From Macrostomum lignano (Eukaryota): DNA of 64,000 nucleotides. Every line of letters starts with the position of its first letter. Within the stretch, counting starts at the first letter, position 1. Location of the stretch: the NCBI GenBank assembly GCA_002269645.1, contig NIVC01001532.1:62001-126000 (forward strand), written 5' to 3'. Below are positions 36,501 to 63,044 of this stretch, one piece after another. A program made the translations under genes and the position numbers. The notes beneath the pieces were generated by a model, which searched no databases, was not told the DNA's origin, and worked only from the letters and a program-made list of their open reading frames with translations.

Positions 36501-39500
36501 GCTGGGCCAGCCTCCCAAGAGTGTCAGTTGCTGGGCCAGCCTCCCAAGAGTGTCAGTTGCTGGGCCAGCCTCCCAAGAGTGTCAGTTGCTGGGCCAGCCT
36601 CCCAAGAGTGTCAGTTGCTGGGCCAGCCTCCCAAGAGTGTCAGTTGCTGGGCCAGCCTCCAAGAGTGTCAGTTGCTGGGCCAGCCTCCCAAGAGTGTCAG
36701 TTGCTGGGCCAGCCTCCCAAGAGTGTCAGTTGCTGGGCCAGCCTCCCAAGAGTGTCAGTTGCTGGGCCAGCCTCCCAAGAGTGTCAGTTGCTGGGCCAGC
36801 CTCCCAAGAGTGTCAGTTGCTGGGCCAGCCTCCAAGAGTGTCAGTTGCTGGGCCAGCCTCTGTCAGAGCCTCCCAAGAGTGTCAGTTGCTGGGCCAGCCT
36901 CCCAAGAGTGTCAGTTGCTGGGCCAGCCTCCCAAGAGTGTCAGTTGCTGGGCCAGCCTCCCAAGAGTGTCAGTTGCTGGGCCAGCCTCTCAGATCCTCAG
37001 TTGCTGGGCCAGCCTCTCAGATCCTCAGTTGCTGGGCCAGCCTCCCAGATCCTCAGTTGCTGGGCCAGCCTCCCAGATCCTCAGTTTTTACACTATTCAA
37101 ACATTGCCACCAAACCATATAGCAGCAAACGTGGAGTTTGATTATCAATATTTCAATAACGAATTCTGCAGCAAATTGCTTCACCAGATGAGGTATGCCC
37201 TTGCCATATGACGTTTCACTGGTCCGTTAATTATTTGTTTTGTTAGAAATCTAAGTTTAATATCTAGCACCACTTCACCCTAACCAGTGTTTGTATGATA
37301 TCAGATCTTTCTCACTTAGAGAATCACAGAAAGTCACCTTCTGCTTCTAATCAAAGCGATTTCAATCATATCGTAATACATTAAAACAGCACGCATCTAT
37401 CGAACTGCCTACCTGTCTTAAAGTATGTTTTTTGCCTAACTGACGGAGCATCTGCGTGTCTGTTTCGTGTACTATTTTGCAAATATTTTTCTCAATTCAT
37501 GTTTCACTTTTATTATTTTATTATTATCCAGCTAGTCAGTAAATTTTAGACTATGTTTAGAAAATCTTTAACTATCAGCTATTGAGTACCATTTTTTACT
37601 AAGTTCTTAATTGATAAATAAATAAAAACAAATTTTTCTAGTCTTAAGTTTTAAATACAATTTTGAAACATTTTTTAAGTAATTGAAAATCCGTCCGTCA
37701 AAAATTCTCAACAAGAATTATATTGTGGTATAAAATGTTAATTAACATAACATAAAAATATTAAAATCATTATTAAATCTATGTTAGTCCTTATATTATA
37801 AAGTAGCTTTTACACAAAATTGTTATACTGAAATACAATCACAAATAATTGAAAAAAAATCACACAAAAGTTTAATAGTTATAAAATAATTTTAGATAAA
37901 TTTAGAGCATCTGTTTTTTTAGTTTTACAGTCCATGCCAAGTTTTTTAAAATTGAAAAGAATAAAAACAGTAAAACAAAATTTTTTTTCATAAATAATTA
38001 TAGAAGATTTTTTTTACCAGAAAAATTACAAATAAAAAAAATTATTTGAGATAATTTAAATTTTAACGTATAAACTTGTAACAAAAACGCTTGAAATTTC
38101 TTGGAAAACCCGTCAGCCGGACGCGGAGGGCGAGGCGCACATCCGGGCCGGCAAGCTGAACCTGGTTGACTTGGCCGGCAGCGAGCGTCAAGCCAAAACC
38201 GAAGCCGAAGGCGACCGTTTGAAAGAGGCTACAAAAATTAATTTATCGCTTAGCGCCCTTGGCAACGTGATCTCGGCTCTGGTTGACGGCAAAAGTACTC
38301 ACATACCCTACCGAGACTCCAAGCTGACTCGCCTGCTGCAGGACTCGCTGGGTGGCAACGCTAAAACTGTTATGGTGGCCAATATTGGACCGGCTAGTTA
38401 CAACTACGAAGAGACTTTAAACACCCTGCGCTACGCCAATCGGGCTAAGAATATCAAGAATAAGCCCAAGATTAATGAGGATCCAAAGGACGCCCTTCTG
38501 AGAGAATATCAGACAGAGATTAATAGGCTTAAGGTACGTTTATTGAATTACGAGTAATTCATATAAAGTCTACCGGTATGTATCATTAGAATCAGTGTAA
38601 CTTTGGTCTAGATATGCATTGATAGATCAGTGCCGATATGTATCGAAAAATCGGTTCGAAAAGTATTTCCGATATGTATCCAAATATCAATTTAAACAGT
38701 ATTTCCGATATGTATCGAAAGAACCTACAATAGCTTTTTCAATTATAAAATTGTTTCCTACAGGAAATGCTTCAAAAGAAAGGCGGCGGCGCCGCCTCGT
38801 CCGCTCCCGGCCAGCGTCGAAAGCGTCGCCGACGCGGCGCTGGCGGCGGCGAAGGTGCCGACGAGGACGACGAGGAGGAAGAGGCGGCTGGAGCGACGCC
38901 GGAGGAAACGGCGGCCGCCTACCAGCGCCAGCGCGAGGAGGAGCTCAAAGCCGAGAAGGACGCCATATTGAATAATAAGAATCTGCTCAAAGAGGAGAAG
39001 GAGCGCCTAATGAAGGATGTGGAAGCAAAGGAGGACGCGCTAAAATCCGAGCTGAAGGGCAAGAAAGAGCTCGAAGAGAAGATCAAAGCGATGGAGAGCA
39101 AACTGCTGCATGGCGACGCCAAGCATTTGAAGAAAGTTACGAAAGAGCAGGAGGAGCAGATTCGCAAGACCGCCGAGGAGATTGAAGAGCAGAAGCGAAA
39201 GGTTTGTTTTTATGTGCCGATATGTATCGATTTTGTGAAAGTAATGAAGAAAATGACTATGTACTTATACCCGATATGTATCGATTTATATAAAACCAGT
39301 ACAGAAAATCAAATTGTACTTATCCCCGATATGTATCGATTCGATTCATATAAAAATCACTAAAGAAAATCTAATTGTACTGATCCCGATATGTATCGAT
39401 TTTATACTTAAAAACAATATTTCTCCCATCCCACAGGAGGAAAAGATGCAGCAGGAGATGGAGGACAAGGAGCTGGAGATGGGCAATTTCGAGCAGAAGT

Positions 39501-40571
39501 ACAACAGCCTGCAGCAGGCTGTGGAAGACAAAACTAGAAAGCTTAAGAAGCTCATGTCCCGACTGCAGCAGATGCGGCAGGAGATTAGCGACCTGCAGGT
39601 TCGTGCTTTGAGCAAAATTTTCCCAAATCATCATCCAATCAATTTATAACTCCAATTTGAATTCTTGGTATCTGAACTTTTAAATCCCATTTCCATATTT
39701 GGGATCCCAGACTCCAAATTCCATTTTCATATTTTGTAATCCCACAATCCAAATCCCATTTCCATATTTTGTAATCCCACAATCCAAATCCCATTTCCAT
39801 ATTTGGGATCCCAGAATCCAAATCCCATTTCCATATTTTGTAATCCCACATTCCAAATCCCATTTTCAGTAATCCCACAATCCAAATCCCATTTCCATAT
39901 TTGGGATCTCAAAATCGAAATCCCATTCCCATACTTTTTAATCCCAATTCCGACAATGATCCGGCAAAATCCCCCCGCCGCAGGAGGAGCACAGGCGCGA
40001 ACGCCAGGAGCTGGAGACCACCCAGGAGGAGCTCACGAAGGAGGTGAAGTTCAAGCAGCTCATCATCGACAATTTCATCCCGCCCGAGGACTTCGAACGC
40101 GTCCGCTCTCGGGCGATGTTCGACGAGGAGGCGGACGAATGGCAGCTGAAGGCTCCATCGGCTGGCGAACGAATGGCCGCCCGTCCGCGTTCGGCTGTGG
40201 CCGGCCGGCGCCGTCCGCTGTCCGAGTATGCCCGGCTGGCCAGTCAGATGGGCGAGAATCCTCGCTACAGAGGCGAGAACTTGATCCGCTTGAACCTGGA
40301 CATGCCCAACCGCACTACTCGCGAGTACGAAGCGCCGGACATGGCGCCTCAGGTGCGCAGCGCCCTGGACGCCGCTCTGCAAGTCGAAGACGATTTGGAC
40401 ATCGACGGGCAGCCGAAAATTTTCAAGAGCAGTGCGCCGGTTGTGCGACCGAAATCGTCCAGGAAGGGCGGCAGTGGCAGTGGCGGCGGTAGCGGCGGCG
40501 GTGGAAGGTCGCGAGAGTCGCAAAATCGACGCCAGGAATTTCCGAGCAGCCGGGGCCTGGTGGGCAAGTGA
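33585..40571 (+). CDS. KIF3B: Kinesin-2 motor subunit KIF3B; exons 33585-33596, 33671-33962, 35658-36043, 38117-38533, 38764-39201, 39437-39598, 39984-40571 (764 aa)
   Basis: P-loop GQT|GTGKT, switch I SSRSH, switch [21 protein letters not shown], neck [11 protein letters not shown] and coiled coil. Tail motifs [22 protein letters not shown] and terminal [10 protein letters not shown] are KIF3B-like rather than KIF3A-like. All junctions GT-AG; the CDS is 2295 nt. Confidence 0.93.
34235..35306. mobile_element. hAT-type non-autonomous element in KIF3B intron 2 carrying a minisatellite
   Basis: 16-bp imperfect TIR (CATCAGCATAGGAACG vs the reverse complement CATAGGCGTAGGAACG, 13/16) and an 8-bp TSD CGTCCAAG/CATCCAAG (7/8). 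Confidence 0.65.
34408..35190. repeat. 21-bp minisatellite (GCGGCGCTAAAATGAGTGCCT)
   Basis: ~37 copies. Confidence 0.97.
36135..37085. repeat. 29-bp minisatellite (GTCAGTTGCTGGGCCAGCCTCCCAAGAGT) in KIF3B intron 3
   Basis: ~32 highly homogeneous copies. Confidence 0.97.
39670..39950. repeat. C-rich minisatellite (CCAAATCCCATTTCCATATT) in KIF3B intron 6
   Basis: Tandem degenerate copies. Confidence 0.85.
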
Positions 40572-43243: not shown

Positions 43244-45199
43244 CTACAAATGCGTAGCATTGGTTGCAACGCTGGAGTCCGTAGGTAGTTGAACTACACT
43301 GACAGCCTTGAGCAGCACTGGTTTGCCAGTCGGGCCGACTCCTGAAGGGTGACTTCGACCAACAGATGCCAACTGGTGCGGCTGTTGCTGCTGCTGCTGC
43401 TGCAAACTTTTCAACTTCTGTTGCATATCGTAGACGCTGTACACCGCGTACTTTCCTCGACTGCGCCGTCTGGCGTAGAAGAAGGCCACTCCGGTGACGA
43501 CGCCCAGCAGGAGAGCAATGCCTAGAACGACGCAGGAGAAGAGCAAAGGCAGCTCTGGTGGGTACGGCAGATGTCCGTAGCCGTAGCCGTAGCCGTTGGC
43601 GCTGTCCTTCTCATCGTAGCAGAAGACGGTGCCGAGTCGCGATCGTCGGTGAATCGGCGACGACGACTGGAGAGACGTCTCGAAGCTGCACACCAGCTCG
43701 CTGGCGTCGGCTCGAAGGCAGCAGTCGCTCGACTGGGCGTCCAGGCGAAGTGCCGTGCCGCGCTGGAACAACAGCCCAACCAGATCGTCGATGGTCGGCC
43801 GTTGGCCTCTCCGACGAAGTCGCTCCATTGACGCGGCAGCGGCGTCGCCCTCGATGCGAATGGAGGCTGAGTGCAGGTGCTGCAGCCGTCTGATGGTCAC
43901 AGAGGCCAACAAGTTTTCCGGCAGTTCGGACAGGTTCAAGTGCACTAGCCGAGGATTGCCGCTAATGTCCAGGTGAACCGATCGGTTATTGCCGTCGCTG
44001 TTTCTTAGAAACCTGTCAACCAGTTCGGCTGCTGCCGCCAAATTTGGCAACCAATTGTCGGCCAGAGACAGACGAAATCGACGACTGCTCAAATCCAAAG
44101 CGGCCGATGGGTCAAACAGGCGAAAGCGAGTCAGCAGTGTTGACAGCTCGGCGTCACCGCCCCACAGTCCGGACAAGTCGAGAAGCTCGGACACGTAGAT
44201 TTGCGACAAAGTCTCGGACTCTGACGCTTTGAGCAGGTTGGAATTTTCGGCCAAATCTAAGCCAGAGAATCTCTGTCCAGCCAGCCTGTCCAACGCTTTC
44301 GGGCTGAGCTGATTGCGCCTCAACAGCAGGGTGGGCGATCCCGTGACCACAGCTCGGCAGACGCTTCCAGGCCGGAAGAAGACGTTCGGCAGGTCTACCA
44401 GTCGGTTTCCGCTCAGATCCGTTCGTCTAGCATTGAAGGTTACATTGGCCAGAGTGCGCAGGCGGTTGTCGCTGAAATCGATTGTGTCGCTGACGGCCAG
44501 CTGCGAGCTGCTGCCGGCCACGCCAACAAGATCGACGCCGTCTCTGGACACCAGGCCAGTCACGTAGATGCTGTTGAATCGTTTACTAGCGCAACTGTTC
44601 GCCCGGTGACTGGTGATACTGGCTGGTAGTTGATTTTCGTTCACCAGTTTCCAGCCAGTTATAGAGAATGTCTCCACTCGGAGGCTGTACATGTAGTCGG
44701 TGGCCTCGGTCAGGTCAAGCGGCTCAGAGACTGCGGTACCGTTGGCTGTGAGCATTCGGATGCTAATGAGCAGCTCGTCGGATGATGCAGTTTGAGCAGG
44801 TTGGAACAATCGACCAGGCAGTGGCGCCAACTGCGTGCCACCAATGTCCAACTCGCCGATGTACAGTCCGTCCATGCGCTTGCCGGAAGCAACATCAACG
44901 CTGAAGCTGGTCAATTGTGGATTTCCGGACAAGTTCAGTAGAGCAATGTTTACCTGACGCCAGTCGAAGTTCGGACTTCGCGTAGTTGTAGCAGCGCCGT
45001 CAGTGAGATCTTCGGAGTGAAAGATCAGAAGCAGGCGTCCCACTAGGCCTTGGTTGGATAGATCAATGTTGGTGACATTGTGCGGATAGACTGGTATGGA
45101 AGCTCCAGCGCCGGTTAGACCGCTGTCGATGGAGACTGACAGGACAGGTAGAAGCCGCAATAGAAACAACAGCAGTGGGGAGAACGCTTTGACCGTCAT
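43244..45199 (-). CDS. Intronless leucine-rich-repeat type I transmembrane protein (651 aa)
   Basis: Signal peptide (LLLFLLRLLPVLS), multiple LxxLDLSxN repeats (IDLSNQGL, LNLSGNPQL, IDFSDNRL, TDLSGNRL, LDLAENSNL, LDISGNPRL), a juxtamembrane Cys cluster, TM segment LLFSCVVLGIALLLGVVTGVAFFY, basic stop-transfer residues and a short tail. Confidence 0.85.
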   Translation of the reverse strand: MTVKAFSPLLLFLLRLLPVLSVSIDSGLTGAGASIPVYPHNVTNIDLSNQGLVGRLLLIFHSEDLTDGAATTTRSPNFDWRQVNIALLNLSGNPQLTSFSVDVASGKRMDGLYIGELDIGGTQLAPLPGRLFQPAQTASSDELLISIRMLTANGTAVSEPLDLTEATDYMYSLRVETFSITGWKLVNENQLPASITSHRANSCASKRFNSIYVTGLVSRDGVDLVGVAGSSSQLAVSDTIDFSDNRLRTLANVTFNARRTDLSGNRLVDLPNVFFRPGSVCRAVVTGSPTLLLRRNQLSPKALDRLAGQRFSGLDLAENSNLLKASESETLSQIYVSELLDLSGLWGGDAELSTLLTRFRLFDPSAALDLSSRRFRLSLADNWLPNLAAAAELVDRFLRNSDGNNRSVHLDISGNPRLVHLNLSELPENLLASVTIRRLQHLHSASIRIEGDAAAASMERLRRRGQRPTIDDLVGLLFQRGTALRLDAQSSDCCLRADASELVCSFETSLQSSSPIHRRSRLGTVFCYDEKDSANGYGYGYGHLPYPPELPLLFSCVVLGIALLLGVVTGVAFFYARRRSRGKYAVYSVYDMQQKLKSLQQQQQQQPHQLASVGRSHPSGVGPTGKPVLLKAVSVVQLPTDSSVATNATHL

Positions 45200-51770: not shown

Positions 51771-51873
51771 AGAGGGGCAGATGTTAAAATGTACAGAGCC
51801 ATATCACGTACAAAGACCACGTGACCGAATAAAGGAATAAAAGACTGGATCATCGGTTCGATAGCATCTTACA
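51771..51873 (+). mobile_element. Possible short LTR (92 bp, 51782-51873) with a preceding polypurine tract
   Basis: AGAGGGGCAGA followed by TGTTA...AATAAA...AATAAA...TTACA. Confidence 0.35.
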
Positions 51874-52430
51874 CCGTCCGTGCTTCATAGCCTGGTGCGT
51901 CAGTCAGCATCACTCGGTCGCCGATCTTGAACTTGATCCTGTCAGCTCCTCGGTTGTGGAACTCGTGCTGTGACCTCTGAGCGGCGTGCAGGTGCGCTAG
52001 CACCACCTGGAAGCCCCGCCAAATTCTCGCCAGCAGATCCGCGCATAGCTGTTGTAGGCCTACAAGACATAGGGCAGCAGGGCGTCCCCAGCCGGTCTGA
52101 TTCTCCGAGCAGAGGGCCGAAAGCATGTTGCCAAGCGTCGTCTTGAATCTCTCAACGTTATCGTTGCCGCTCGTCGCTCGAGGGAAAAAGTGAGGTCTGC
52201 GACTACACGACCTAGGGAACACCATGCCGCAGCACGACGCTGGTCACTAGGGCTCCGGCTACTGTCTTGGCGTCGATTTGGCTGAGTGTCGCAGTCTCCA
52301 CCCACTTTGAAAACATATCGATGAAGCAGAGAATGTACATGTAGCTCTTGCCTGACTCGGTGACTGGCAGAGGACCCTTGATGTCGGGCTGCACAACAGC
52401 TCAGGGCCTCGACAGCAGCGGATGCCGCAC
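51869..52430 (-). pseudogene. Ty3/Gypsy integrase remnant (frameshifts, a stop, an internal deletion)
   Basis: GPLPVTESGKSYMYILCFIDMFSKWVET..DAKTVAGALVTSVVLRHGVP (rve core), NVERFKTTLGNML, ALLPYVL*AYNS, FKIGDRVML. Confidence 0.88.
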
Positions 52431-52734
52431 CAAAAATGCATAGATTCAATGATTCTGACCAATATATGCCAGTTAGCATAATTTAATCCCAGTGAAAAAA
52501 CCCACTGACGTATATGAAGTTAACTAGCCGGATGCTTGCTAGGCGGATGTTTGTCTGACTACGAGCGTACGTAATTTTTTAACCGGCAGCAATTCAGTGA
52601 GCAAATAGGAGCATCAGAGTTTTTTAACCAGTCGCTTCCCCTAATAAAATAGCCCAGGAATGGAAAACTCCGACCATCGGGTCGTTTGAAACTTCACAAT
52701 AGCAATCCTGCTCCCTCAGGATTTTATCTCTTCT

Positions 52735-54113: not shown

Positions 54114-54167
54114 CCACGGAGCGAGCTGCAGCAGCCACAGAGCGGCCATTGGTCGACTAAAAAAATT

Positions 54168-55520
54168 TCGACTAAAAAATAAAAGGAATTCAATGACGTG
54201 TTCGAGCGTATTTATAGCACTTAAGCTCGTATCCGTTTGGTTGCTGCCATCAGCGTAAAAATTGATATCTGAAGTCATGCCTTCGCTATAAAACTGTCTC
54301 TACAATGTTCTCAATGCCGAATCAAAGGTGTAGCTGCCAAATGGGGGTATTTTTACGCTACACTAACAGATAATGACGTCATACGTCGGCTGAACGTTGA
54401 TATTTTGTAAATCTACCTATTCGCCAGCGACGTCGATAAACGTTGGAAACGTCTGCTTGAGTAAGTTGGAAACGTTGGAAACGTCTGCTTGAGTAAGTTG
54501 GAAACGTTGGAAACGTCTGCTTGAGTAAGTTGGAAACGTTGGAAACGTCTGCTTGAGTAAGTTGGAAACGTTGGAAACGTCTGCTTAATCCGTACACGAA
54601 TAAATAATCTGCATTTAAGCCTGTTCCTGATTGTTGGCATATCGAAGATACGCCAGTCTAATCAGTATTAAAAGTGCAGAGTCAGCATACTCGCTATAGT
54701 GGTGTTTCACTGAGAGACTTTCCTGCCGTTTTTCCTAAGCAGGCAAGAAACCTCCTCATCTCCCGCAAGTCCTATACCTCTACCGTTCACTCTTCTGTCC
54801 TGAAGGACTAAGGCCAAGTCTTAAAGCAACAACAATGTACAAACGGCAGGAGAAAGATGGCTGAGATGAGGATAGAGCAGAAAAGTTAGAGTGGGTAGAG
54901 AGAATTCTTGCCTGTACACTTCAGAACGCCTCCCATTATCTCGTTTGCGTGCAGCAGCCTTCCTTTCCTATAGCCTGTGATCCAGCAACACTATTGTATG
55001 AAATTTCTGCATGGCAGAACAATTGACACTGCGTCTGACTCGTAGCAGCCATTCCAAAATGAATTAATAAACACGTACAAAGATAGAAAACATTGCTTTC
55101 AGAGAATTTCCAGCTGGAGAATGATGTACATAATGATTCTATTAAACAGTACCATAAAATTTCGGTTTCGTATATCATTAGCACTAAAGCTAACACAGAG
55201 AAGTTCTTGAAATGTACCTATTGACCATTAGCTTATAATTGCAATGTAAACATTCAATAGTTTACTACTCGTGAAGTGTCCAGAAGATTTTAGGTTTACC
55301 GATCTGCTTCAATTATATATATATATAGTCGGTATTATTCAGATTGACGCAGATTATACCACAGCAGCGAAACTGTAGTGTGACCTACACAATATACTAC
55401 AGATCAGTATAATAGTAATAACCAGACACTTTTGTCTGAAACTGCATGCTCACAGCATTCAGCCAAAAATGTTTTCAGTTTTCTATTTTAGATATTCTTC
55501 GGTTTTCATGCAGCTACAGT
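54168..55520 (+). repeat. Copy 1 of a diverged ~1.4-kb direct repeat (contains a 32-bp minisatellite at 54440-54585)
   Basis: Collinear shared blocks with 57941-59450, e.g. TTGCTGCCATCAGCGTAAAAATTGATATCTGAAGT and CAATGTACAAACGGCAGGAGAAAGATG. Confidence 0.9.
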
Positions 55521-55606
55521 AGACATGCTTTAATAGAAGAGATGCGACTTTTAATTGCCAACCCTGGTTATAGAAATTTTACTCTTAAAGAAAAAATGGT
55601 CAGCCC

Positions 55607-56006
55607 TGCTGACTGACTGACTGACTGACTGACTTGAGTGAGTGGGTGACTGACTGACTGACTGACTGACTTGAGTGAGTGGGTGACTGACTGACTGACT
55701 GACTGACTGACTGACTTGAGTGAGTGGGTGACTGACTGACTGACTGACTGACTGACTGACTGACTGACTGACTGACTGACGGTCTGACTTGAGTGAGTGG
55801 GTGACTGACTGACTGACTGACTGACTTGAGTGAGTGGGTGACTGACTGACTGACTGACTGACTGACTGACTTGAGTGAGTGGGTGACTGACTGACTGACT
55901 GACTGACTGACTGACTGACTGACTGACTGACTGACGGTCTGACTTGAGTGAGTGGGTGACTGACTGACTGACTGACGACTGACTGACTGACTGACTGACT
56001 GACTTT
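55607..56006. repeat. (TGAC)n microsatellite with recurring TTGAGTGAGTGGG inserts
   Basis: Direct run. Confidence 0.97.
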
Positions 56007-56504
56007 ATCAATTAGATGGTATACAGACTCTGTCCACGGAGCGAGCTGCAGCAGCCACAGAGCGGCCATTGGCCATAGAGTGTTTCTCGTTTTGACTGTC
56101 CAAATTATCATTTAGATTGTCAAAAACAGTACTTTCTAGTGGCTCATTCGTTTGTCTTATTTATTTATTTATTTATTTGGCCGGGACAAATAAATATCTT
56201 TTGCATTGGACCATTAACTTATTCGGGTATAAATCGATCGTTTGCACGAACTTTTAGGATGCCTCTCTGGAGTGAGAGAGAGGGAGAGAAAGAGAGAATG
56301 TACGTAGCACGATCTAGTTGCAGTGGATGGGAGGCTGAGCTACAGAAATGGAATTAAGTCCGCGGACCAATAGAAATGGTTGGAATAAACAGCCAGCTAC
56401 GTATATGAACACGACCATTCATAACCATTAGAAGCCAGCTCTTAGATCTGTGAACAATACCACGAGCCTCAATACTTTGACCTGCACTGCAGCATCAACA
56501 CGCC

Positions 56505-57740
56505 ATGGCAAGCAGTAGTCTAATTCTAAGGATACTGAGTGTGAGACGGATTGCCATGTTTGGCACTCTGCTGCTGATGCTCATGTTCATCAACTTTTAC
56601 TCGCGACCGCTCAAGCACTGCAACTGCGCCAACCATCTCGAAGGAAGTCACTCAGTCTCGAGTGACTCCCAATTTGATAACTCAGCCGTCAAATCACAGA
56701 TCGATAATTTGGAAACCCGCAAAAGTCCCGACGTTAAATCGGCGAAGAAGTTTGTCAACGATTTCAAAGCCGGCTACGAGGCATTCTATCGTTATCAGAA
56801 TAAGTCTCTCTATCAGGTTCAGAAAGATACACGGTTGCCGTTGCTACGACTCTCGGAGGCTGAGAACGACGTTAAGTACCGCACTAAGATGGGCAAGCAG
56901 TGGATGCAAGAGAAAACTGCCGTCTTTGTTGGCACCGCTAGAAATGCAAAAGACCATCTGCCGAGGAACATAAAAGACATTCATCGCTTGGGTAAACTGT
57001 TCAAGGACTACTGGATCGTGTTCGTTGAGAACGACTCAAAAGACGGTACCAGAGAGTTCCTTATTGGCGTGGTCAAGCAGTATAACAAGACCATCATTCT
57101 GGGTTGCGAGCCCATCAACTCACCCGCTGAATGTCACATCGACATCAAGTACCGCTCCGGTAAGATTCACAAACCGGGATGGGCTCAGAAGCGCAACGAG
57201 GAAGAATTTGTTGACCGAGGTGTAACAATGAGCATACTGCGCAACATGATTCTGGATTACATCTACGCCAATCTAGCTGACAAGGCCGACCTCATGATCG
57301 CCATTGAGCCCGACATCTCTTGGCACCCGTGGAATCTTGACAACATTGCCCAGGGGATCTACTACTTCAGCACGAGGCCTCAGCTCGATCTTCTCTGCGC
57401 CAACGGTCGTCTTTGGGGTAAGATCTACGATCCATGCTCGAGGACGTACTATTCAATGAAGAAGTTCACCAATGTGGATGACAACGATAAAACGTTCGTT
57501 ACTGACGCAATGGCCGTAGAGAAAAACAAGATACCGATCAAGGTGGATTCCTGCTTTCAGGCGTTCGCTATTCATCGCATCAGCAGTCTGGTGAAGCACA
57601 ATGCTCACTACTACCTAGCGCCTGGCGAGAGGAACTGTGAGCACAACACGTTGGCTAGACAGCTGCCAGAGAGGTACATTGACCCGGTCATGTGGCTTGA
57701 CATCTACTCTCTAGTAGTCCACAGCAGAGACCGTTGGTGA
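56505..57740 (+). CDS. Intronless type II membrane GT-A-fold glycosyltransferase (GT2-like / Cap59-like), 411 aa
   Basis: Signal anchor IAMFGTLLLMLMFINFY and a stem region, followed by VFVGTARN..HLP.NI..I.RLGKLFKDYWIVFVENDSKDGT, SILRNMILDYI, LCANG, IYD, VDSCF.AFAIH, CEH. Acceptor CTGCAG 12 nt before the ATG. Confidence 0.8.
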   Translation: MASSSLILRILSVRRIAMFGTLLLMLMFINFYSRPLKHCNCANHLEGSHSVSSDSQFDNSAVKSQIDNLETRKSPDVKSAKKFVNDFKAGYEAFYRYQNKSLYQVQKDTRLPLLRLSEAENDVKYRTKMGKQWMQEKTAVFVGTARNAKDHLPRNIKDIHRLGKLFKDYWIVFVENDSKDGTREFLIGVVKQYNKTIILGCEPINSPAECHIDIKYRSGKIHKPGWAQKRNEEEFVDRGVTMSILRNMILDYIYANLADKADLMIAIEPDISWHPWNLDNIAQGIYYFSTRPQLDLLCANGRLWGKIYDPCSRTYYSMKKFTNVDDNDKTFVTDAMAVEKNKIPIKVDSCFQAFAIHRISSLVKHNAHYYLAPGERNCEHNTLARQLPERYIDPVMWLDIYSLVVHSRDRW

Positions 57741-57940
57741 TGCTTGTGCCAATACGCTGCGCGTTAATTCTTGATATTTTGATGATCCCTGAACTCAGAT
57801 ATATACTTCTATTGGTATTCCACTTTTCTCACTTTCTTTGCCTCATAAAAGCAGTACGCTGAAACTCATACTTAATTTGTCATTGTATTAGATGTTGTAT
57901 TTTGTGCCTTGAAGTTTTCCTGACCGATTTATCAAAGATA

Positions 57941-59450
57941 TCGACTGAAAATAAAAGGCACTCAATGGAATGTACGAGCAAATTTATTGCGTTTGTTGCT
58001 GCCATCAGCGTAAAAATTGATATCTGAAGTACACGTATTCCCGAGCAACATTTCAACGTGTCGACGAATTGATGGATACCGTTGTCAAATGGGAGTATTT
58101 TTACGTTATGTCGGGAGATAATGACGTCGTACGTCGGCTGAACGTCGATATTTTGTAAATCTACCCATTCGTACAGCGACGTCGATAAATGTCGAATAAA
58201 TAAGTAGCATTTAAGCCTGTTCCTGATTGTTATCATGTCGAAGATACACCGGTCTACTCAGGGTTAAAAGTGCGGGGCTATTATAGTGGCGTTTCTCCGA
58301 GAGACTTTCCTGGTTTTTTTCCTAGGCAGGCAAGACACCTCATCTCCCGCCAGTACTATACGAGCTACATCTACTGTTCACTCTTCTGTACAGAGAGGAT
58401 CCGGCTCTGAGTGTCCCCCCCCCAGTCTGAGATCCGTCCACACGCGCGGCATTGAGAAATAACCCACCGGCTTTCCACACTTGTTTCTGGCGCCTAGGCA
58501 ACGGTCCTGAAGGACTAAGGCTGAGTCTTAAAGGGACAATGTACAAACGGCAGGAGAAAGATGCTGAGATGAGGATAGAGCAAAAAAATTAGTGGTTGGT
58601 AAGAGAAAATTTTAGCCTGTGTACACTTCAAAACGCCCGGGCAGCCTGAAAGACTCCCAGCATTATCCCGGGTGCAGCATGCAGCCCTTCCGTTCCTATA
58701 GCCTGTGTTTTAGCTACCTTCTGTTGCATGCCAAATTTCTGCAAAGTAAAACAATGACACCGCGTCTGACTCGTAGCAGCCATTCTGTTACGGTTGAAGA
58801 ACACGAAGGCACTTGGGTTTATGAATTGAAGGAGGGCGTTATTTGAGCAGCTCCAAATTGGCATGTGCACGAAGCTCGCTCTTATATTTCTTTACCCTTA
58901 AGGGCATTGAAGTTTCTAGCAAACAAGGTGTACGGTAACATTTTGCCCCGATGGCACATAGACTACTTTTAGAAGAAAATAAATCTATGAATAATTCAGC
59001 ATAGCATGCAGCATATGCAACACATTCCGAAACATGAGTTAATAAACAGGTAAAAGGCAGAAAATTTGCTAGCTGGAGAATAGCGCACATTTATTATTCT
59101 AGCTGTACCATAATATTTTGGTTTCGTATGTCGTTACCACTAAAGCAGGCACAGAGTTATTCAAATGTACGTATTGACCATGCACAAGGTTATAATTATA
59201 CCGGTAATGTAAACATTTAATAATTTAATATAAAAGTGTCTAGAAGATTTTGGGTTTACCGATCTGCTTTAACTATGTGTGCATATCTGTAGCCTATATT
59301 ATTCAGATTGATGCAGCTCAATACCACAGCAGTGTGTCTGTAGAGTGTGACTTACAATATACTATAGTTTAATATTTAGCAGAAATCAGCTAAAATGCTT
59401 CGGTTTTGTATACTCGCCGTTTTCATATAATATATACAGTAGCTACAGTG
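57941..59450 (+). repeat. Copy 2 of the diverged ~1.4-kb direct repeat
   Basis: Collinear with 54168-55520; also followed by (TGAC)n. Confidence 0.9.
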
Positions 59451-59530
59451 GGTTTGATTCAGGGACAACTAAAACCCTGAAGACCTGTCAACCTTTTAGT
59501 TGTCCCTGGCTTGATTTTAGAGAAGAGTTG

Positions 59531-59599
59531 TGACTGACTGACTGACTGACTGACTGACTGACTGACTGACTGACTGACTGACTGACTGACTGACTGACT

Positions 59600-59642
<43 letters not shown>

Positions 59643-59885
59643 TGACTGACTGACTGACTGACTGACTGACTGACTGACTGACTGACTGACTGACTTGATG
59701 ATTGAGGCGTTTCTGACTGACTGACTGACTAACTGACTAACTGACTGACTGACTGACTGACTGACTGACTGACTGACTGACTGACTGACTGACTGACTGA
59801 CTAACTGACTAACTGACTGACTGACTGACTGACTGACTAACTGACTAACTGACTGACTGACTGACTGACTGACTGACTGACTGAC
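59531..59885. repeat. (TGAC)n microsatellite
   Basis: Direct run with one 18-nt foreign insert at 59696-59713. Confidence 0.97.
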
Positions 59886-60429
59886 TTTTCTGTTCACAGA
59901 TTTTATCTGCGCTTAAATGTCACTGACTACGGCTGATTCCGAAATTAACTACTCAAGACTGACAGGACTCTTGTAGCAATTGAAAGCGCAGAAGTTTAGA
60001 TACGCATGTGTCAACCGCAATGAAAAACTATTTCACTTTTCTATTCCTATTGCCAGGCCTTTTATATTTATGGACTTTTCAGTGAGGCAAGTTGCTTTCG
60101 TTGAATTATCTATTGAATGAAAACAGTTTAAATCTCGTGGATCGTTTAGGTTCAGCGAAGCGAAAAACTTCCAAAAAGACCATTTGTGATGCTTCTGTCT
60201 GGCGTGCTGAAGCGACAAGCAGTCAAACGCATGCTCATGAGACAGATCGCGTGCTAGCACTAAGCAATAAAGTATGAAGCTGTCAAGAGCGTCACGCCTC
60301 GTTCAACGCAGACATTCAATCTGAAATGTTGAAACCTGCTACAGAACTTGTCATTGTCCTGTAGCCACTTCAGATCCAAAGTCAATGTATCCGCAATTTC
60401 AACTTGTACCTTGAAACTAAAGCTTTCGC

Positions 60430-61158
60430 TTGGTGCTCAAGCTCTAAAAGCCTAATCAACCTATAGAGCTTGAGACTGTCCCGACTATCTTGGTGCTCAA
60501 GCTCTAAAAGCCTAATCAACCTATAGAGCTTGAGACTGTCCCGACTATCTTGGTGCTCTGGGTGATTGAGGCGTTTCTTCCCGACTGTCTTGGTGCTGTG
60601 GGTGATTGAGGCGTTTCTTCCCGACTATCTTGGTGCTCTGGGTGAGTGAGGCGTTTCCTCCCGACTGTCTTGGTGCTCTGGGTGAGTGAGGCGTTTCTTC
60701 CCGACTGTCTTGGTGCTCTGGGTGATTGAGGCGTTTCTTCCCGACTGTCTTGGTGCTCTGGGTGATTGAGGCGTTTCTTCCCGACTGTCTTGGTGCTCTG
60801 GGTGAGTGAGGCGTTTCTTCCCGACTGTCTTGGTGCTCTGGGTGAGTGAGGCGTTTCTTCCCGACTGTCTTGGTGCTCTGGGTGAGTGAGGCGTTTCTTC
60901 CCGACTGTCTTGGTGCTCTGGGTGAGTGAGGCGTTTCTTCCCGACTGTCTTGGTGCTCTGGGTGATTGAGGCGTTTCTTCCCGACTGTCTTGGTGCTCTG
61001 GGTGAGTGAGGCGTTTCTTCCCGACTGTCTTGGTGCTCTGGGTGATTGAGGCGTTTCTTCCCGACTGTCTTGGTGCTCTGGGTGATTGAGGCGTTTCTTC
61101 CCGACTGTCTTGGTGCTCTGGGTGAGTGAGGCGTTTCTTCCCGACTGTCTTGGTGCTC
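60430..61158. repeat. 40-bp minisatellite (CCGACTGTCTTGGTGCTCTGGGTGAGTGAGGCGTTTCTTC, ~15 copies) preceded by a 60-bp tandem duplication
   Basis: Direct periodicity; the 60-mer ends in the same CCGACTATCTTGGTGCTC motif. Confidence 0.95.
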
Positions 61159-63044
61159 CAGATCACTATGACTGGAGTACAGTTTCGTTTGGGAGTTTAG
61201 CGACTTGAATGGCAACTTGAGAATGTTCGGTTTCTCTGTAGACTCGTCGGGCGACAAGCACAGGCTCGATATGGATCTGTGGGACCGTTGAACGTGAGCA
61301 GGTCGAATTTCGGACAATTCTTTATTGATGAACATCCGGGTGAAAACTACAACTTTTTCTACAACTATTTTTCTGACTCCGGTCCGTGCTCGATCGAGTG
61401 GGAATATTCCATGAAGACCTTCGAGTGCAATGATTGGGCAGTGAGAGGCCGCAGCAAATTAAGCTGGAGGCTGGTGTCCTGAGAAAATTTGAAATTGAAA
61501 GCTACTTTAATTAGAAACTTATAGCAAAATTATAGTTCAGCATTTTATTAAAAACCAGATAACTGGGAAATCAGTGAAATATACTAAAACACCATTCCAG
61601 TGAAATTTTACTCTTGTTTTAAAGTTCTTCTCTTTGTAGTTTTATTTGTATGCACTTCCAAACCACGTCTTGAAAACTAGTCTTTACCTTTAATTGATGA
61701 TCTAGCTTAATTAGTAAGATGAAAATAATTATTATTGTTATCTAAACCCATATGTAAGAATTATAATTCTCTCATCTATATGTACATGTAGGTGAGACCG
61801 CCAGGCAGCGGGTGATCGAGTCCGAGACGTACTATACTAGCTATTCCCAAATAATGGATAGTCACTGTGCTTTTGTCAACACAAAAAACGCGTCTACTGA
61901 CATTTACCAGCCCAGAGGACGAGATTGTGAGATTGGGAATCAGCAACCCCATCCAGATGAATCTGAAGATGAACGAACAACATTTCTGATGAATTATCCG
62001 TGCTGGACGTCATCGTTATGGTGCCAAAGTGCTAATGCAGTTAGATACAGAATGGTGCTGTCAAGCAAAATGTGGAAAAACGTTTTATAAGATCAGATTT
62101 GCGATCAGCATTTTACATTATGATGAGGACGCACTTTTTTCCAAATTCCACGTCTCGCACATGGGTGCTAAGCTTGTTAGCCTACTAACAGTAGGCTATG
62201 GGCATATTTCTTCTTTTTATGTAATTTTCCTTGAATTCATACTAATAGGATCTTTGTAGCTATATCATTTTGCCATACCTGTAGTCATTATAACATAGGC
62301 ACGGTTTTCGCTACTTTTGGGGTCATAAATCATTGCTTGTGAGCTGGTCTGACAGCAACCTGGGCCTCACTCAGTGTTGAGGCTGGCGCCAGATGGTCTG
62401 AGAGGATGCGGGCGGTAGCTTTTTTCTCATCATTTTTTACAGGCCATCAAGATTTATGAGGTCAGGGCCCATTGCTCGTGTTCACTCAAGCGTTTAACAG
62501 ATTTGACAGCTATGCGTATGCGCTTTACCCCTAAAAGTACTTTGGGATAAGCGATTATCGATTTCTCTTCACCATCTTCACTTTCTATTTAATGAGATCT
62601 TTCTAATGCATATTTTTCATTAATATTTGTAATTCCTACGCGTAAGGTCATAAATCATAATGTAGCGATTTTGAGTGATTTATGACAGCACCTGGCGTAT
62701 TTTTATGGCCCCGAGGGAACTGATAGGATCTTCTGGTCACGTGAGTTTGGGTAGCAACAAGCTCAGCCAATCAGAAAATTCGACGTCAGTTATAACAAAT
62801 CGGCTCAGCCAATCATGCGTCGAGGTGTTTCATTATAACAAATTGCAGTCCAGTTGGCGGCTATACAAACCGATGTTTTTAGCCCGCTCGGACTCAACCT
62901 CCTCGGACCCAGCACACAACTTCTGGCTCCCGGGACTCGACCGGCCGCTGGCTCAGATGAGTAGCTAAGCTAGTAGGCGCCAGTCACAGTGGACCAATGG
63001 CAAGGCAGTTCTCAGTCGATCAATCTATCAAATCAGTTACCCAC

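What the first reader, a model, noticed from the sequence alone, without database searches (positions are those of the whole stretch)
56505..57740. Horizontal-transfer candidate: microbial/giant-virus-like glycosyltransferase with a Golgi-type anchor
The catalytic motif series (GTARN..HLP, YWIVFVENDSKDGT, LRN..LDYI, CANG, YD, V.SCF..FAI, CEH) resembles, from recall, GT2-like/Cap59-related enzymes of bacteria, fungi and nucleocytoplasmic large DNA viruses rather than any standard animal family. The gene is intronless yet has a eukaryotic type II anchor and stem, a 5' splice acceptor and host-like composition, suggesting domestication. The expected DxD position reads EPD. It could make an unusual surface, mucus or adhesive glycan.
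Basis: inference. Interest (0 to 1): 0.7.

Follow-up and report, generated by a model that had tools for sequence, protein, structure and literature searches.

The report
Giant-virus-like glycosyltransferase gene in a flatworm
This is a real, intact flatworm (Macrostomum lignano) gene for a membrane-anchored sugar-transferring enzyme whose only detectable relatives outside its own flatworm gene family are enzymes of giant viruses and environmental microbes, so it is a credible but old and unproven case of gene transfer into an animal.

Summary
The window is Macrostomum lignano DNA. The gene lies among intron-bearing animal genes, on four contigs of the GenBank assembly, with host-like codon usage, so it is not contamination. 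A deep-alignment AlphaFold model shows an N-terminal membrane helix, a disordered stem and a confident GT-A catalytic domain. The protein itself gets no significant Pfam hit, but it belongs to a family in which 99 of 122 members match PF11735 (Cap59/Cmt1, GT69-like). All named members of its clade are M. lignano paralogs: at least eight groups, monophyletic at 99.5% bootstrap, 38-71% identical, one with a GT-AG intron. The next relatives, about 30% identical, are about 320-aa proteins on giant-virus contigs. The best structural match is a Marseillevirus-MAG glycosyltransferase (E 1e-23). Ancient transfer followed by expansion is the best reading, but donor and direction are unresolved, and absence from other animals is not proven. 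The type II anchor is ancestral (100 of 113 relatives have one), not a sign of domestication. This copy differs at two near-invariant columns (D268E, Y357H).

The parts
56505..57740 (+). Single-exon CDS (411 codons plus stop) of a type II membrane GT-A glycosyltransferase. GenBank equivalent: BOX15_Mlig011967g2, annotated as a hypothetical protein.
   Evidence: ORF list. 99% identical to P0001. The exact protein is also on two other contigs of the same assembly. In-frame stop 9 codons upstream of the ATG.
56514..56600 (+). N-terminal signal-anchor / transmembrane helix (residues 4-32), preceded by a very short cytosolic tail.
   Evidence: Kyte-Doolittle maximum 1.81 at residues 10-30, the only window above 1.6. 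AF2 helix 4-32 with pLDDT 75-92. The same feature is present in 100/113 relatives.
56601..56861 (+). Stem region (residues 33-119), mostly disordered. About 80 aa longer than in viral-type relatives. Contains C39, C41 and sequon N99.
   Evidence: pLDDT below 50 over residues 36-58, 60-75 and 101-112. Relatives are about 320 aa and align only from about residue 120 onward.
56862..57719 (+). GT-A fold catalytic domain (residues 120-405).
   Evidence: AF2 pLDDT mostly above 90, pTM 0.77. Foldseek matches GT-A enzymes in the PDB and a Marseillevirus-MAG glycosyltransferase in BFVD at E 1e-23. hhalign against the viral-type clade gives E 1.8e-52.
57024..57053 (+). Nucleotide-sugar binding block VENDSKDGTR (residues 174-183).
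   Evidence: E175, N176 and S178 are invariant in 122/122 sequences; D180 and R183 in 121/122. The block aligns on the equivalent block of ArnC and sll0501 (GT2).
57306..57314 (+). Metal/diphosphate-binding DxD position, reading E268-P269-D270 in this copy.
   Evidence: Column 268 is D in 120/122 (E only here and in P0009). Column 270 is D in 122/122. All other flatworm paralogues read DPD.
57573..57575 (+). H357 at a column that is Y in 120/122 family members. The 99%-identical sister copy keeps Y.
   Evidence: The H variant is present on two further contigs, so it is not a sequencing error.
57636..57644 (+). C378-E379-H380 block, a candidate catalytic or metal-ligand motif in the C-terminal part of the domain.
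   Evidence: C, E and H are each present in 121/122 sequences. Their role is inferred, not tested.
57950..57955 (+). AATAAA, a candidate polyadenylation signal 210 nt after the stop codon.
   Evidence: Read directly from the sequence. Function is inferred.
54161..56008 (.). Upstream copy of a composite repeat of about 1.9 kb that brackets the gene. It ends in an 8-bp-unit microsatellite array.
   Evidence: blastn against the downstream copy gives 73-87% identity in collinear blocks.
57934..59888 (.). Downstream direct copy of the same composite repeat.
   Evidence: Cross-matches in the homeologous contig L001 imply the same arrangement there.

Best explanation
The ORF is a genuine, intact Macrostomum lignano gene. 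It encodes a type II membrane protein: a short cytosolic tail, one signal-anchor helix, a flexible stem and a lumenal GT-A catalytic domain. It most likely works as a metal-dependent, nucleotide-sugar-using glycosyltransferase of the secretory pathway. In this model the VENDSKDGTR block binds the nucleotide, E268-x-D270 with H380 holds the divalent cation and diphosphate, and the conserved cysteines form lumenal disulfides. The protein belongs to a flatworm-type multigene family of at least eight diverged paralogue groups. That family is a long-branched offshoot of a Cap59/Cmt1-related (GT69-like, PF11735) family otherwise found mainly in giant viruses (Marseilleviridae-size genomes, giant-virus MAGs) and in uncultured microbes.

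The most likely history is a single ancient acquisition from the giant-virus or microbial-eukaryote gene pool by an ancestor within the Macrostomum lineage. It was followed by full compositional adaptation, duplication, divergence and intron gain.

Shown here: the gene, its integration, the fold, the family relationships, and the monophyly of the paralogues. Inferred: the enzymatic mechanism, the subcellular location, and the transfer with its direction. Unknown: the donor sugar and the acceptor. GDP-mannose is the precedent from Cmt1, by established knowledge of CAZy family GT69.

My confidence is about 0.85 that this is a GT-A type II glycosyltransferase of this family, and about 0.55-0.6 that it arose by horizontal transfer. 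The single figure given for this explanation is for the whole statement, transfer included.
For: Gene and integration:
- ORF and motifs confirmed.
- The window is collinear at 95-98% identity over about 16 kb with GenBank contig NIVC01002515.
- The exact protein is on two more contigs of 484 and 206 kb.
- Neighbours are animal genes: kinesin exons, Bcl-2, MRP-L51, PQ-loop, GH31, and an LRR-like membrane protein.
- Codon usage is host-like.
- Between the two copies there are 5 synonymous and 6 non-synonymous differences, pN/pS 0.32.

Fold:
- AF2 with 122 sequences gives pLDDT 79.3 and pTM 0.77, with the catalytic core above 90.
- PDB matches are all GT-A glycosyltransferases (COLGALT1, RmlT, PcManGT, ArnC, TarP, MpgS) at E 1e-7 to 1e-5.

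Family:
- The exhaustive HMMER search found 944 relatives.
- 99/122 members match PF11735 and 39 match GT2.
- hhalign of the flatworm clade against the viral-type clade gives probability 100%, E 1.8e-52.
- All 6 invariant columns are kept in this protein.

Viral affinity:
- 24 IMG/VR loci, including 6 giant-virus MAGs and 7 complete genomes of 346-381 kb.
- Four of four informative neighbourhoods of the nearest relatives are dense, intronless and rich in RING-finger and glycosyltransferase genes.
- The top BFVD hit is the Marseillevirus LCMAC102 glycosyltransferase: E 1e-23, TM 0.84, 28% identity.

No other animal found: every named close hit is M. lignano.

Tree and age:
- Paralogues are monophyletic at 99.5% bootstrap, with the short viral-type protein P0009 as sister at 74%.
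- The clade is nested 11-14 nodes deep under both rootings.
- Paralogues are 38-71% identical.
- P0004 has a canonical GT-AG intron.
- Fragments from another organism group with one paralogue subgroup at 50-64% identity.
Against: - Deep nodes of the NJ tree have bootstrap support of 1% or less, so 'nested within viral sequences' is not statistically supported. Only distance methods were available.
- The nearest non-flatworm relatives are only 30-32% identical. No IMG/VR contig carries flatworm-specific motifs. No donor can be named.
- Most relatives are unnamed environmental proteins. Only 30 clusters could be looked up by name, and only the top 150 of 944 hits were visible. Unannotated animal or protist members therefore cannot be excluded.
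- Giant viruses often take genes from eukaryotic hosts, so the direction could be the reverse, or both lineages could descend from a eukaryotic ancestor.
- This protein has no significant Pfam hit of its own.
- This copy carries D268E and Y357H at near-invariant columns, so full catalytic competence of this particular copy is not certain.
- No transcript evidence was obtained. No paper mentions the gene, and no transcriptome contig encodes the exact protein.
Confidence: 0.58

Rival explanations
1. Vertical descent. A GT69-like enzyme was present in early eukaryotes or opisthokonts (fungi still have Cap59/Cmt1), was kept in the Macrostomum lineage and lost in most other animals. Giant viruses picked up their copies from eukaryotic hosts.
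For: The family is related to the fungal PF11735 family. The flatworm family is old, diverged, intron-bearing and fully host-like. Deep tree nodes are unresolved. Many relatives lie on short environmental contigs of unknown origin that could be protists.
Against: No named animal, fungal or protist protein appears among the close hits, although the protein collections include NCBI and UniRef. The window protein does not reach the largely fungal PF11735 model at all, yet it matches viral-type proteins at E 1e-25 to 1e-32. This history needs many independent losses across Metazoa. Every informative genomic context of the near relatives is virus-like.
Confidence: 0.25
2. Recent endogenous giant-virus fragment. 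The gene is part of a recently integrated piece of viral DNA, not a domesticated host gene.
For: The gene is intronless and is bracketed by direct repeats. Its relatives are viral.
Against: There is no other virus-like gene in the 64-kb window, and the neighbours are animal genes and simple repeats. Codon usage matches the host. The closest viral relative is only about 30% identical. The gene belongs to a diverged host paralogue family. The flanking repeats are themselves only 73-87% identical.
Confidence: 0.03
3. Contamination or misassembly. The ORF comes from a microbe, food organism or virus in the culture and was wrongly joined to flatworm DNA.
For: Its closest relatives are microbial or viral, and it is annotated only as a hypothetical protein.
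Against: The same locus with the same flanks occurs on four contigs of 165-484 kb at 95-100% identity. Composition is host-like. At least eight paralogues are spread over other large contigs next to intron-bearing animal genes such as cyclophilins, and one paralogue has a GT-AG intron.
Confidence: 0.01
4. Decaying or neofunctionalised copy. This locus (Mlig011967) no longer acts as a canonical glycosyltransferase, because it carries substitutions at two near-invariant catalytic-domain columns. This rival concerns present function only and is compatible with any of the origin scenarios.
For: D268E is seen in 2/122 sequences, and Y357H is unique among 122 and absent from the sister copy. There are 6 non-synonymous against 5 synonymous differences between the copies.
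Against: The reading frame is intact in all four copies. All six invariant columns and the other near-invariant columns are kept. D-to-E is conservative, and the sister taxon P0009 shares it. pN/pS is 0.32, below 1, though the counts are tiny.
Confidence: 0.1

Closest known systems
Cap59 / Cmt1 family of Cryptococcus neoformans (CAZy GT69; Pfam PF11735 CAP59_mtransfer). Cmt1 is a GDP-mannose alpha-1,3-mannosyltransferase of capsule synthesis (established knowledge, not tested here).
   Same: Homology is shown by transitivity: 99/122 members of this protein's family match PF11735 (best E 8e-14, several above the 28.8-bit threshold), and paralogue P0003 scores 27.6 bits. Both have a type II membrane topology, a predicted GT-A fold and a DxD-type motif.
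   Different: The window protein does not hit PF11735 at all. It lies on a long branch with a flatworm-specific stem, a loop insertion at about residues 216-236, the DPD/EPD form of the motif, and extra cysteines (C311). Donor, acceptor and linkage are unknown. The host is an animal, not a fungus.
Uncharacterised giant-virus glycosyltransferases: Marseillevirus LCMAC102 A0A481YUL9, the homologues in seven complete 346-381 kb IMG/VR genomes (sizes fit Marseilleviridae from my own recollection; not verified by a tool), giant-virus MAGs, and Sylvanvirus and ChoanoV1 proteins.
   Same: These are the best structural and sequence relatives: Foldseek E 1e-23, TM 0.84 and 28% identity; tblastn 25-33% identity over about 285 aa; hhalign E 1.8e-52. 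They share the N-terminal anchor, the invariant E-N-x-S, R, D and D columns, and the C-E-H block.
   Different: The viral proteins are about 300-340 aa without the long stem. They sit in dense, intronless viral gene clusters, often next to other glycosyltransferases. Their composition follows the virus. None has a known function; a review of giant-virus glycans does not mention GT69 or Cap59.
Generic GT-A enzymes with solved structures: COLGALT1 (GT25), and the GT2-type ArnC, TarP, RmlT, PcManGT and MpgS.
   Same: They share the overall GT-A Rossmann-like fold and the position of the nucleotide-binding block.
   Different: Identity is only 9-14%, TM on the query is 0.3-0.4, and sequence searches are not significant (PDB profile E at or above 0.12; PF00535 13.6 bits against a 23.3-bit cut-off). 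No solved structure belongs to this family.

Membership tests
Pfam PF11735 CAP59_mtransfer / CAZy GT69 | Score at or above the curated gathering threshold (28.8 bits) against the family model | tested here: not met
   The window protein gets no PF11735 hit even at E up to 10. Paralogues score 27.6, 17 and 16.7 bits. Distant relatives pass with 46, 45.8, 40.8, 32.8 and 31.3 bits. 99/122 family members match at E 1e-3 or better. Homology is therefore transitive, not direct.
Pfam PF11735 CAP59_mtransfer / CAZy GT69 | GT-A fold with a DxD-type metal-binding motif | tested here: met
   The AF2 model is confident and matches only GT-A enzymes. The DxD columns are present and read E-P-D here, D-P-D in the other paralogues and D-x-D in 120/122 sequences.
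Pfam PF11735 CAP59_mtransfer / CAZy GT69 | Retaining GDP-mannose alpha-1,3-mannosyltransferase activity | not testable with these tools
   No activity data exist for this protein or for any viral-type relative.
Viral-type GT69-like clade (unnamed; about 320-aa proteins of giant viruses and metagenomes) | Full-length homology of the catalytic domain | tested here: met
   hmmsearch E values from 2.5e-32 downward, covering profile positions of about 120-400. hhalign probability 100%, E 1.8e-52, 262 columns.
Viral-type GT69-like clade (unnamed; about 320-aa proteins of giant viruses and metagenomes) | Retention of the invariant and near-invariant columns | tested here: met
   All six invariant columns are kept (E175, N176, S178, R246, D270, D309). 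Of the near-invariant columns that one search lists for this alignment (90% or more), three differ: D268E, Y357H, and G353A, which all flatworm paralogues share.
Viral-type GT69-like clade (unnamed; about 320-aa proteins of giant viruses and metagenomes) | N-terminal signal-anchor (type II topology) | tested here: met
   Query KD maximum 1.81 at residues 10-30. 100/113 relatives exceed KD 1.6 within their first 70 residues.
Pfam PF00535 Glycos_transf_2 (GT2) | Score at or above the gathering threshold (23.3 bits) | tested here: not met
   13.6 bits, E 0.063, covering only residues 145-196. 39/122 relatives give weak GT2 hits. This is a resemblance at clan level only.
Horizontally transferred gene in an animal genome | Physically integrated among host genes on long contigs, in more than one copy or assembly unit | tested here: met
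   Neighbouring host genes.
Horizontally transferred gene in an animal genome | Absent from other Metazoa | tested here: inconclusive
   No named non-Macrostomum animal was found in three indexed searches or in 30 cluster look-ups. However, most hits are unnamed, only 150 of 944 were visible, and no animal genome collection could be scanned directly.
Horizontally transferred gene in an animal genome | Nested with statistical support inside a donor clade | tested here: inconclusive
   Nested 11-14 nodes deep under two rootings, but the supporting nodes have bootstrap of 1% or less. Only the sister P0009 gets 74%.

The most novel reading that the evidence does not exclude
An ancestor of Macrostomum acquired a giant-virus (or giant-virus-host) GT69-like glycosyltransferase. 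The gene was domesticated and expanded into a family of at least eight paralogue groups that builds lineage-specific glycans of the secretory pathway. That would make it one of very few documented animal gene families of giant-virus affinity, and it would put the only genetically tractable representative of an otherwise uncharacterised giant-virus enzyme family in a laboratory model animal.
Probability: 0.4. Interest if true: 0.65.

Novelty: new member of a known kind. Interest (0 to 1): 0.5.

Why it matters
Well-supported transfers of functional genes into animals are rare and contested, and links to giant viruses are rarer still. This candidate passes the usual artefact tests: it is integrated, present in multiple copies, host-like in composition, part of a paralogue family and, in one paralogue, intron-bearing. 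It has no detectable animal counterpart. The viral-type relatives are conserved across Marseilleviridae-size genomes and many giant-virus MAGs, yet they are completely uncharacterised. A related family in a model flatworm with good expression resources gives a descriptive route, through expression maps and structures, to learn what this enzyme class does. For flatworm biology, a lineage-specific expansion of secretory-pathway glycosyltransferases points to lineage-specific glycans. If vertical descent turns out to be right, the finding is still a new animal branch of the GT69-like superfamily, but a much less surprising one.

Tried and rejected
- Direct family assignment failed. Pfam, NCBIfam and PDB sequence searches with the single protein gave nothing significant. 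The PDB profile search gave only weak GT2 N-terminal matches.
- The first AF2 run with 4 sequences failed (pLDDT 40.5). The 122-sequence alignment fixed it.
- The indexed protein search is lossy for this family, returning only 5 hits even with a 50-sequence profile. Names therefore came from cluster look-ups.
- The prokaryote origin test was weak. Only one distant bacterial MAG protein (Paludibacteraceae, P0185) is known. A bacterial donor is not favoured, but the scan was narrow.
- The search for a close viral donor with flatworm-specific motifs in IMG/VR found none. A6 was too diverse to use as a probe.
- Contamination, misassembly and a recent viral insertion were rejected; see the rival explanations.
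- The literature holds nothing on this gene, on transfer of this family into Macrostomum, or on GT69 in giant viruses.
- The AG upstream of the ATG was rejected as evidence of splicing.
- The 651-aa intronless ORF 11 kb upstream was checked as a possible second foreign gene. It reads as an ordinary signal-peptide, LRR-like, transmembrane animal protein.
Full report
**1.

The window holds an uninterrupted ATG-initiated ORF at 56505-57740 on the + strand, 411 codons. An in-frame stop lies nine codons upstream, so the start is well defined. An AATAAA lies 210 nt after the stop codon. The '5' splice acceptor' is only an AG 11 nt before the ATG, with no convincing pyrimidine tract. I give it no weight.

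**2. Source and integration**

- The protein is 99% identical to the Macrostomum lignano hypothetical protein BOX15_Mlig011967g2, which lies on a 165-kb GenBank contig.
- That contig is collinear with the window at 95-98% identity from about 47.1 to 62.9 kb.
- The exact window protein is encoded on two more contigs of 484 and 206 kb in the same assembly. This fits the known duplicated genome of this flatworm.
- The window also carries ordinary animal genes:
  - a kinesin motor domain split over at least three exons (33650-38557, +)
  - a Bcl-2 family member, mitoribosomal L51 and an integrase remnant
  - PQ-loop and GH31 proteins
  - a signal-peptide, LRR-like, transmembrane protein (43244-45199, -)
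- There is no second copy of the gene and no virus-like neighbour in the window.
- GC3 of the ORF is 0.637, inside the 0.59-0.65 range of the neighbouring animal ORFs. Its codon usage correlates with theirs (r = +0.5) and not with the viral homologues (r = -0.25).

Contamination, misassembly and a recent viral insertion are therefore rejected.

**3. What the protein is**

On its own it is almost invisible to curated libraries:
- a sub-threshold GT2 match in Pfam (13.6 bits)
- nothing in NCBIfam
- nothing meaningful among PDB sequences

An exhaustive HMMER search with a profile of the protein and three paralogues found 944 relatives: 212 at E 1e-10 or better and 7 at E 1e-30 or better. A 122-sequence alignment turned a failed AlphaFold model (pLDDT 40.5) into a confident one (pLDDT 79.3, pTM 0.77). 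The model has three parts:
- a helix at residues 4-32
- a disordered stem at about residues 33-119
- a compact alpha/beta domain at residues 120-405, mostly above pLDDT 90

Hydropathy shows a single membrane segment at about residues 10-30.

Foldseek against the PDB returns only GT-A glycosyltransferases (COLGALT1, RmlT, PcManGT, ArnC, TarP, MpgS) at 9-14% identity. The fold is clear, but no solved structure belongs to this family.

Conservation across the 122 sequences:
- Invariant in all 122: E175, N176, S178, R246, D270, D309.
- Present in 120 or 121 of the 122: D180, R183, C201, C210, R238, D268, F351, Y357, C378, E379, H380.

The VENDSKDGTR block (174-183) aligns on the nucleotide-binding block of the GT2 enzymes ArnC and sll0501.

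**4. Likely mechanism (inferred)**

This is a type II membrane glycosyltransferase of the ER/Golgi lumen. I infer four working parts:
- The 174-183 block holds the nucleotide of a sugar donor.
- E268-x-D270, probably with H380, holds a divalent cation and the diphosphate.
- The conserved cysteines form lumenal disulfides.
- The stem spaces the catalytic domain from the membrane.

The donor sugar and the acceptor are unknown. The only biochemical precedent in the superfamily is Cmt1 of Cryptococcus, a GDP-mannose alpha-1,3-mannosyltransferase (established knowledge of CAZy GT69, not tested here).

**5. Family relationships**

- Scanned one by one, 99 of the 122 family members match PF11735 (CAP59_mtransfer, GT69-like; best E 8e-14), and 39 also match GT2 weakly. 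Several relatives exceed Pfam's own threshold.
- The flatworm paralogues fall just below that threshold (27.6, 17 and 16.7 bits). The window protein does not register at all.
- The protein is therefore homologous to the Cap59/Cmt1 superfamily by transitivity, but it is not a member by the curated criterion.
- A profile-profile comparison of the flatworm clade with the viral-type clade is unambiguous: probability 100%, E 1.8e-52, 262 columns, 32% identity.

**6. Who else has it**

All named close relatives are M. lignano proteins:
- gene ids 008488, 026086, 008975/021081/022679, 030790/003076/029645 and 033934
- gene ids 023516 and 031518

With this locus, that makes at least eight paralogue groups. 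They are 38-71% identical in the catalytic domain and lie on different large contigs.

- The P0002 gene is intronless.
- The P0004 gene has one canonical GT-AG intron of about 674 bp within the conserved region, and it sits beside intron-bearing cyclophilin genes.
- Three short fragments from other sequencing runs (P0007, P0011, P0118) are 50-64% identical to one paralogue subgroup. The family therefore predates the split between M. lignano and at least one other, unidentified organism.

Beyond this clade there is a sharp drop to proteins of about 300-340 aa that are only 30-32% identical.

Where context could be read, these relatives are on giant-virus-like DNA:
- There are 24 IMG/VR loci. 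Six are giant-virus MAGs. Seven are complete genomes of 346-381 kb, whose sizes fit Marseilleviridae by my own recollection; I could not verify this.
- Four contigs show dense, intronless neighbourhoods holding RING-finger proteins, kinases, AAA ATPases, DNA-repair enzymes and further glycosyltransferases.

In the viral structure library the best match by ten orders of magnitude is a Marseillevirus LCMAC102 glycosyltransferase (E 1e-23, TM 0.84, 28% identity). Sylvanvirus and ChoanoV1 proteins follow.

- A narrow scan of prokaryote genomes found nothing.
- One distant bacterial MAG protein exists.
- No IMG/VR contig carries flatworm-specific motifs, so no close donor is known.

**7. Phylogeny**

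I built a neighbour-joining tree of 176 sequences over 306 columns with 200 bootstraps.
- The flatworm paralogues are monophyletic at 99.5%.
- The short, viral-type metagenome protein P0009 is sister at 74%. P0009 alone shares C311 and E268 with the window protein.
- Rooted on the bacterial protein or at midpoint, the flatworm clade lies 11-14 nodes deep within the viral and environmental radiation. Its branches are long: root-to-tip 1.59 against a mean of 1.05.
- Those internal nodes have essentially no bootstrap support. Only distance methods were available.

**8. Interpretation**

The best reading is one ancient acquisition from the giant-virus or microbial-eukaryote gene pool. It was followed by compositional adaptation, duplication, divergence and intron gain. 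I put this at about 0.55-0.6.

The main rival, at about 0.25, is vertical descent of a GT69-like gene with wide loss in animals, with viruses as recipients. What the data cannot do:
- name a donor
- fix the direction of transfer
- prove absence from other animals, because most relatives are unnamed and only 150 of 944 hits were visible

**9.

- The type II anchor is not a sign of domestication. 100 of 113 non-flatworm relatives and most viral ORFs have the same N-terminal anchor. Only the longer stem is flatworm-specific.
- This is a family-level event, not a lone gene.
- The suggested role in surface, mucus or adhesive glycans is untested. No paper mentions the gene.

**10. Peculiarities of this copy**

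- It reads E at column 268, which is D in 120/122 sequences.
- It reads H at column 357, which is Y in 120/122 sequences. The 99% sister copy keeps Y357.
- The two copies differ by 5 synonymous and 6 non-synonymous changes, pN/pS 0.32. The counts are too small to interpret.

The gene is most likely still functional, but altered or relaxed function of this locus cannot be excluded (about 0.1).

**11. Novelty**

The enzyme kind, a GT-A glycosyltransferase related to GT69, is known. What is new is an animal branch of it, its affinity to giant-virus enzymes, and its expansion in a flatworm. The literature I could search describes none of these.

Noticed in passing
window 54161-56008 and 57934-59888: The gene is bracketed by two direct, diverged copies (73-87% identity) of a composite repeat of about 1.9 kb. 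Each copy ends in an 8-bp-unit microsatellite array that reads as SQSV-type peptide repeats on the minus strand. The homeologous contig L001 seems to share the arrangement, while paralogue loci L034 and L035 lack the element. Whether this is an old LTR-like pair, a local duplication or a common interspersed repeat is unknown.
   Followed up: partly
L035 8682-9355: The single intron of paralogue P0004 (Mlig008975g1) is largely filled by a tandem array of 20-bp units.
   Followed up: no
window 60379-61318: A 40-bp tandem array of at least 17 copies at 97-98% identity creates long artificial ORFs on the minus strand (60516-61335). Its copy number differs between the window and L001.
   Followed up: no
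window 51869-52479 (-): A remnant of a retroelement integrase (rve domain, weak hit, 20.4 bits) in a region with overlapping broken ORFs. It lies about 4 kb upstream of the gene.
   Followed up: no
window 43244-45199 (-): An intronless 651-aa ORF with no Pfam hit. By eye it has a signal peptide, an LRR-like ectodomain, one transmembrane segment and a Q-rich tail, so it is probably a lineage-specific animal surface protein.
   Followed up: partly
window 33650-39650 (+): A kinesin gene with its motor domain split over at least three exons, followed by coiled-coil exons. Subfamily was not tested.
   Followed up: partly
L029 (Logan SRR31628434, 1193 bp): A fragment of a flatworm-type homologue from another, unidentified organism (GC 57.5%, 58% identical to P0157). 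It contains one frame change within the contig, which could be an assembly error, an intron or a pseudogene.
   Followed up: partly
P0199 (UniRef A0A1I8FAJ4, 646 aa): A M. lignano gene model named 'RING-type E3 ubiquitin transferase' contains a region 39% identical to the glycosyltransferase family. It is probably a fused gene model from an older annotation. It is curious because RING-finger genes also neighbour the viral homologues.
   Followed up: no
L002, L028, L031, L033 (giant-virus-like contigs): The viral-type homologues usually sit beside other glycosyltransferase genes (GT1, GT2, GT25, GT32-like, PLOD-type). This suggests that they act within viral glycan-synthesis clusters.
   Followed up: no
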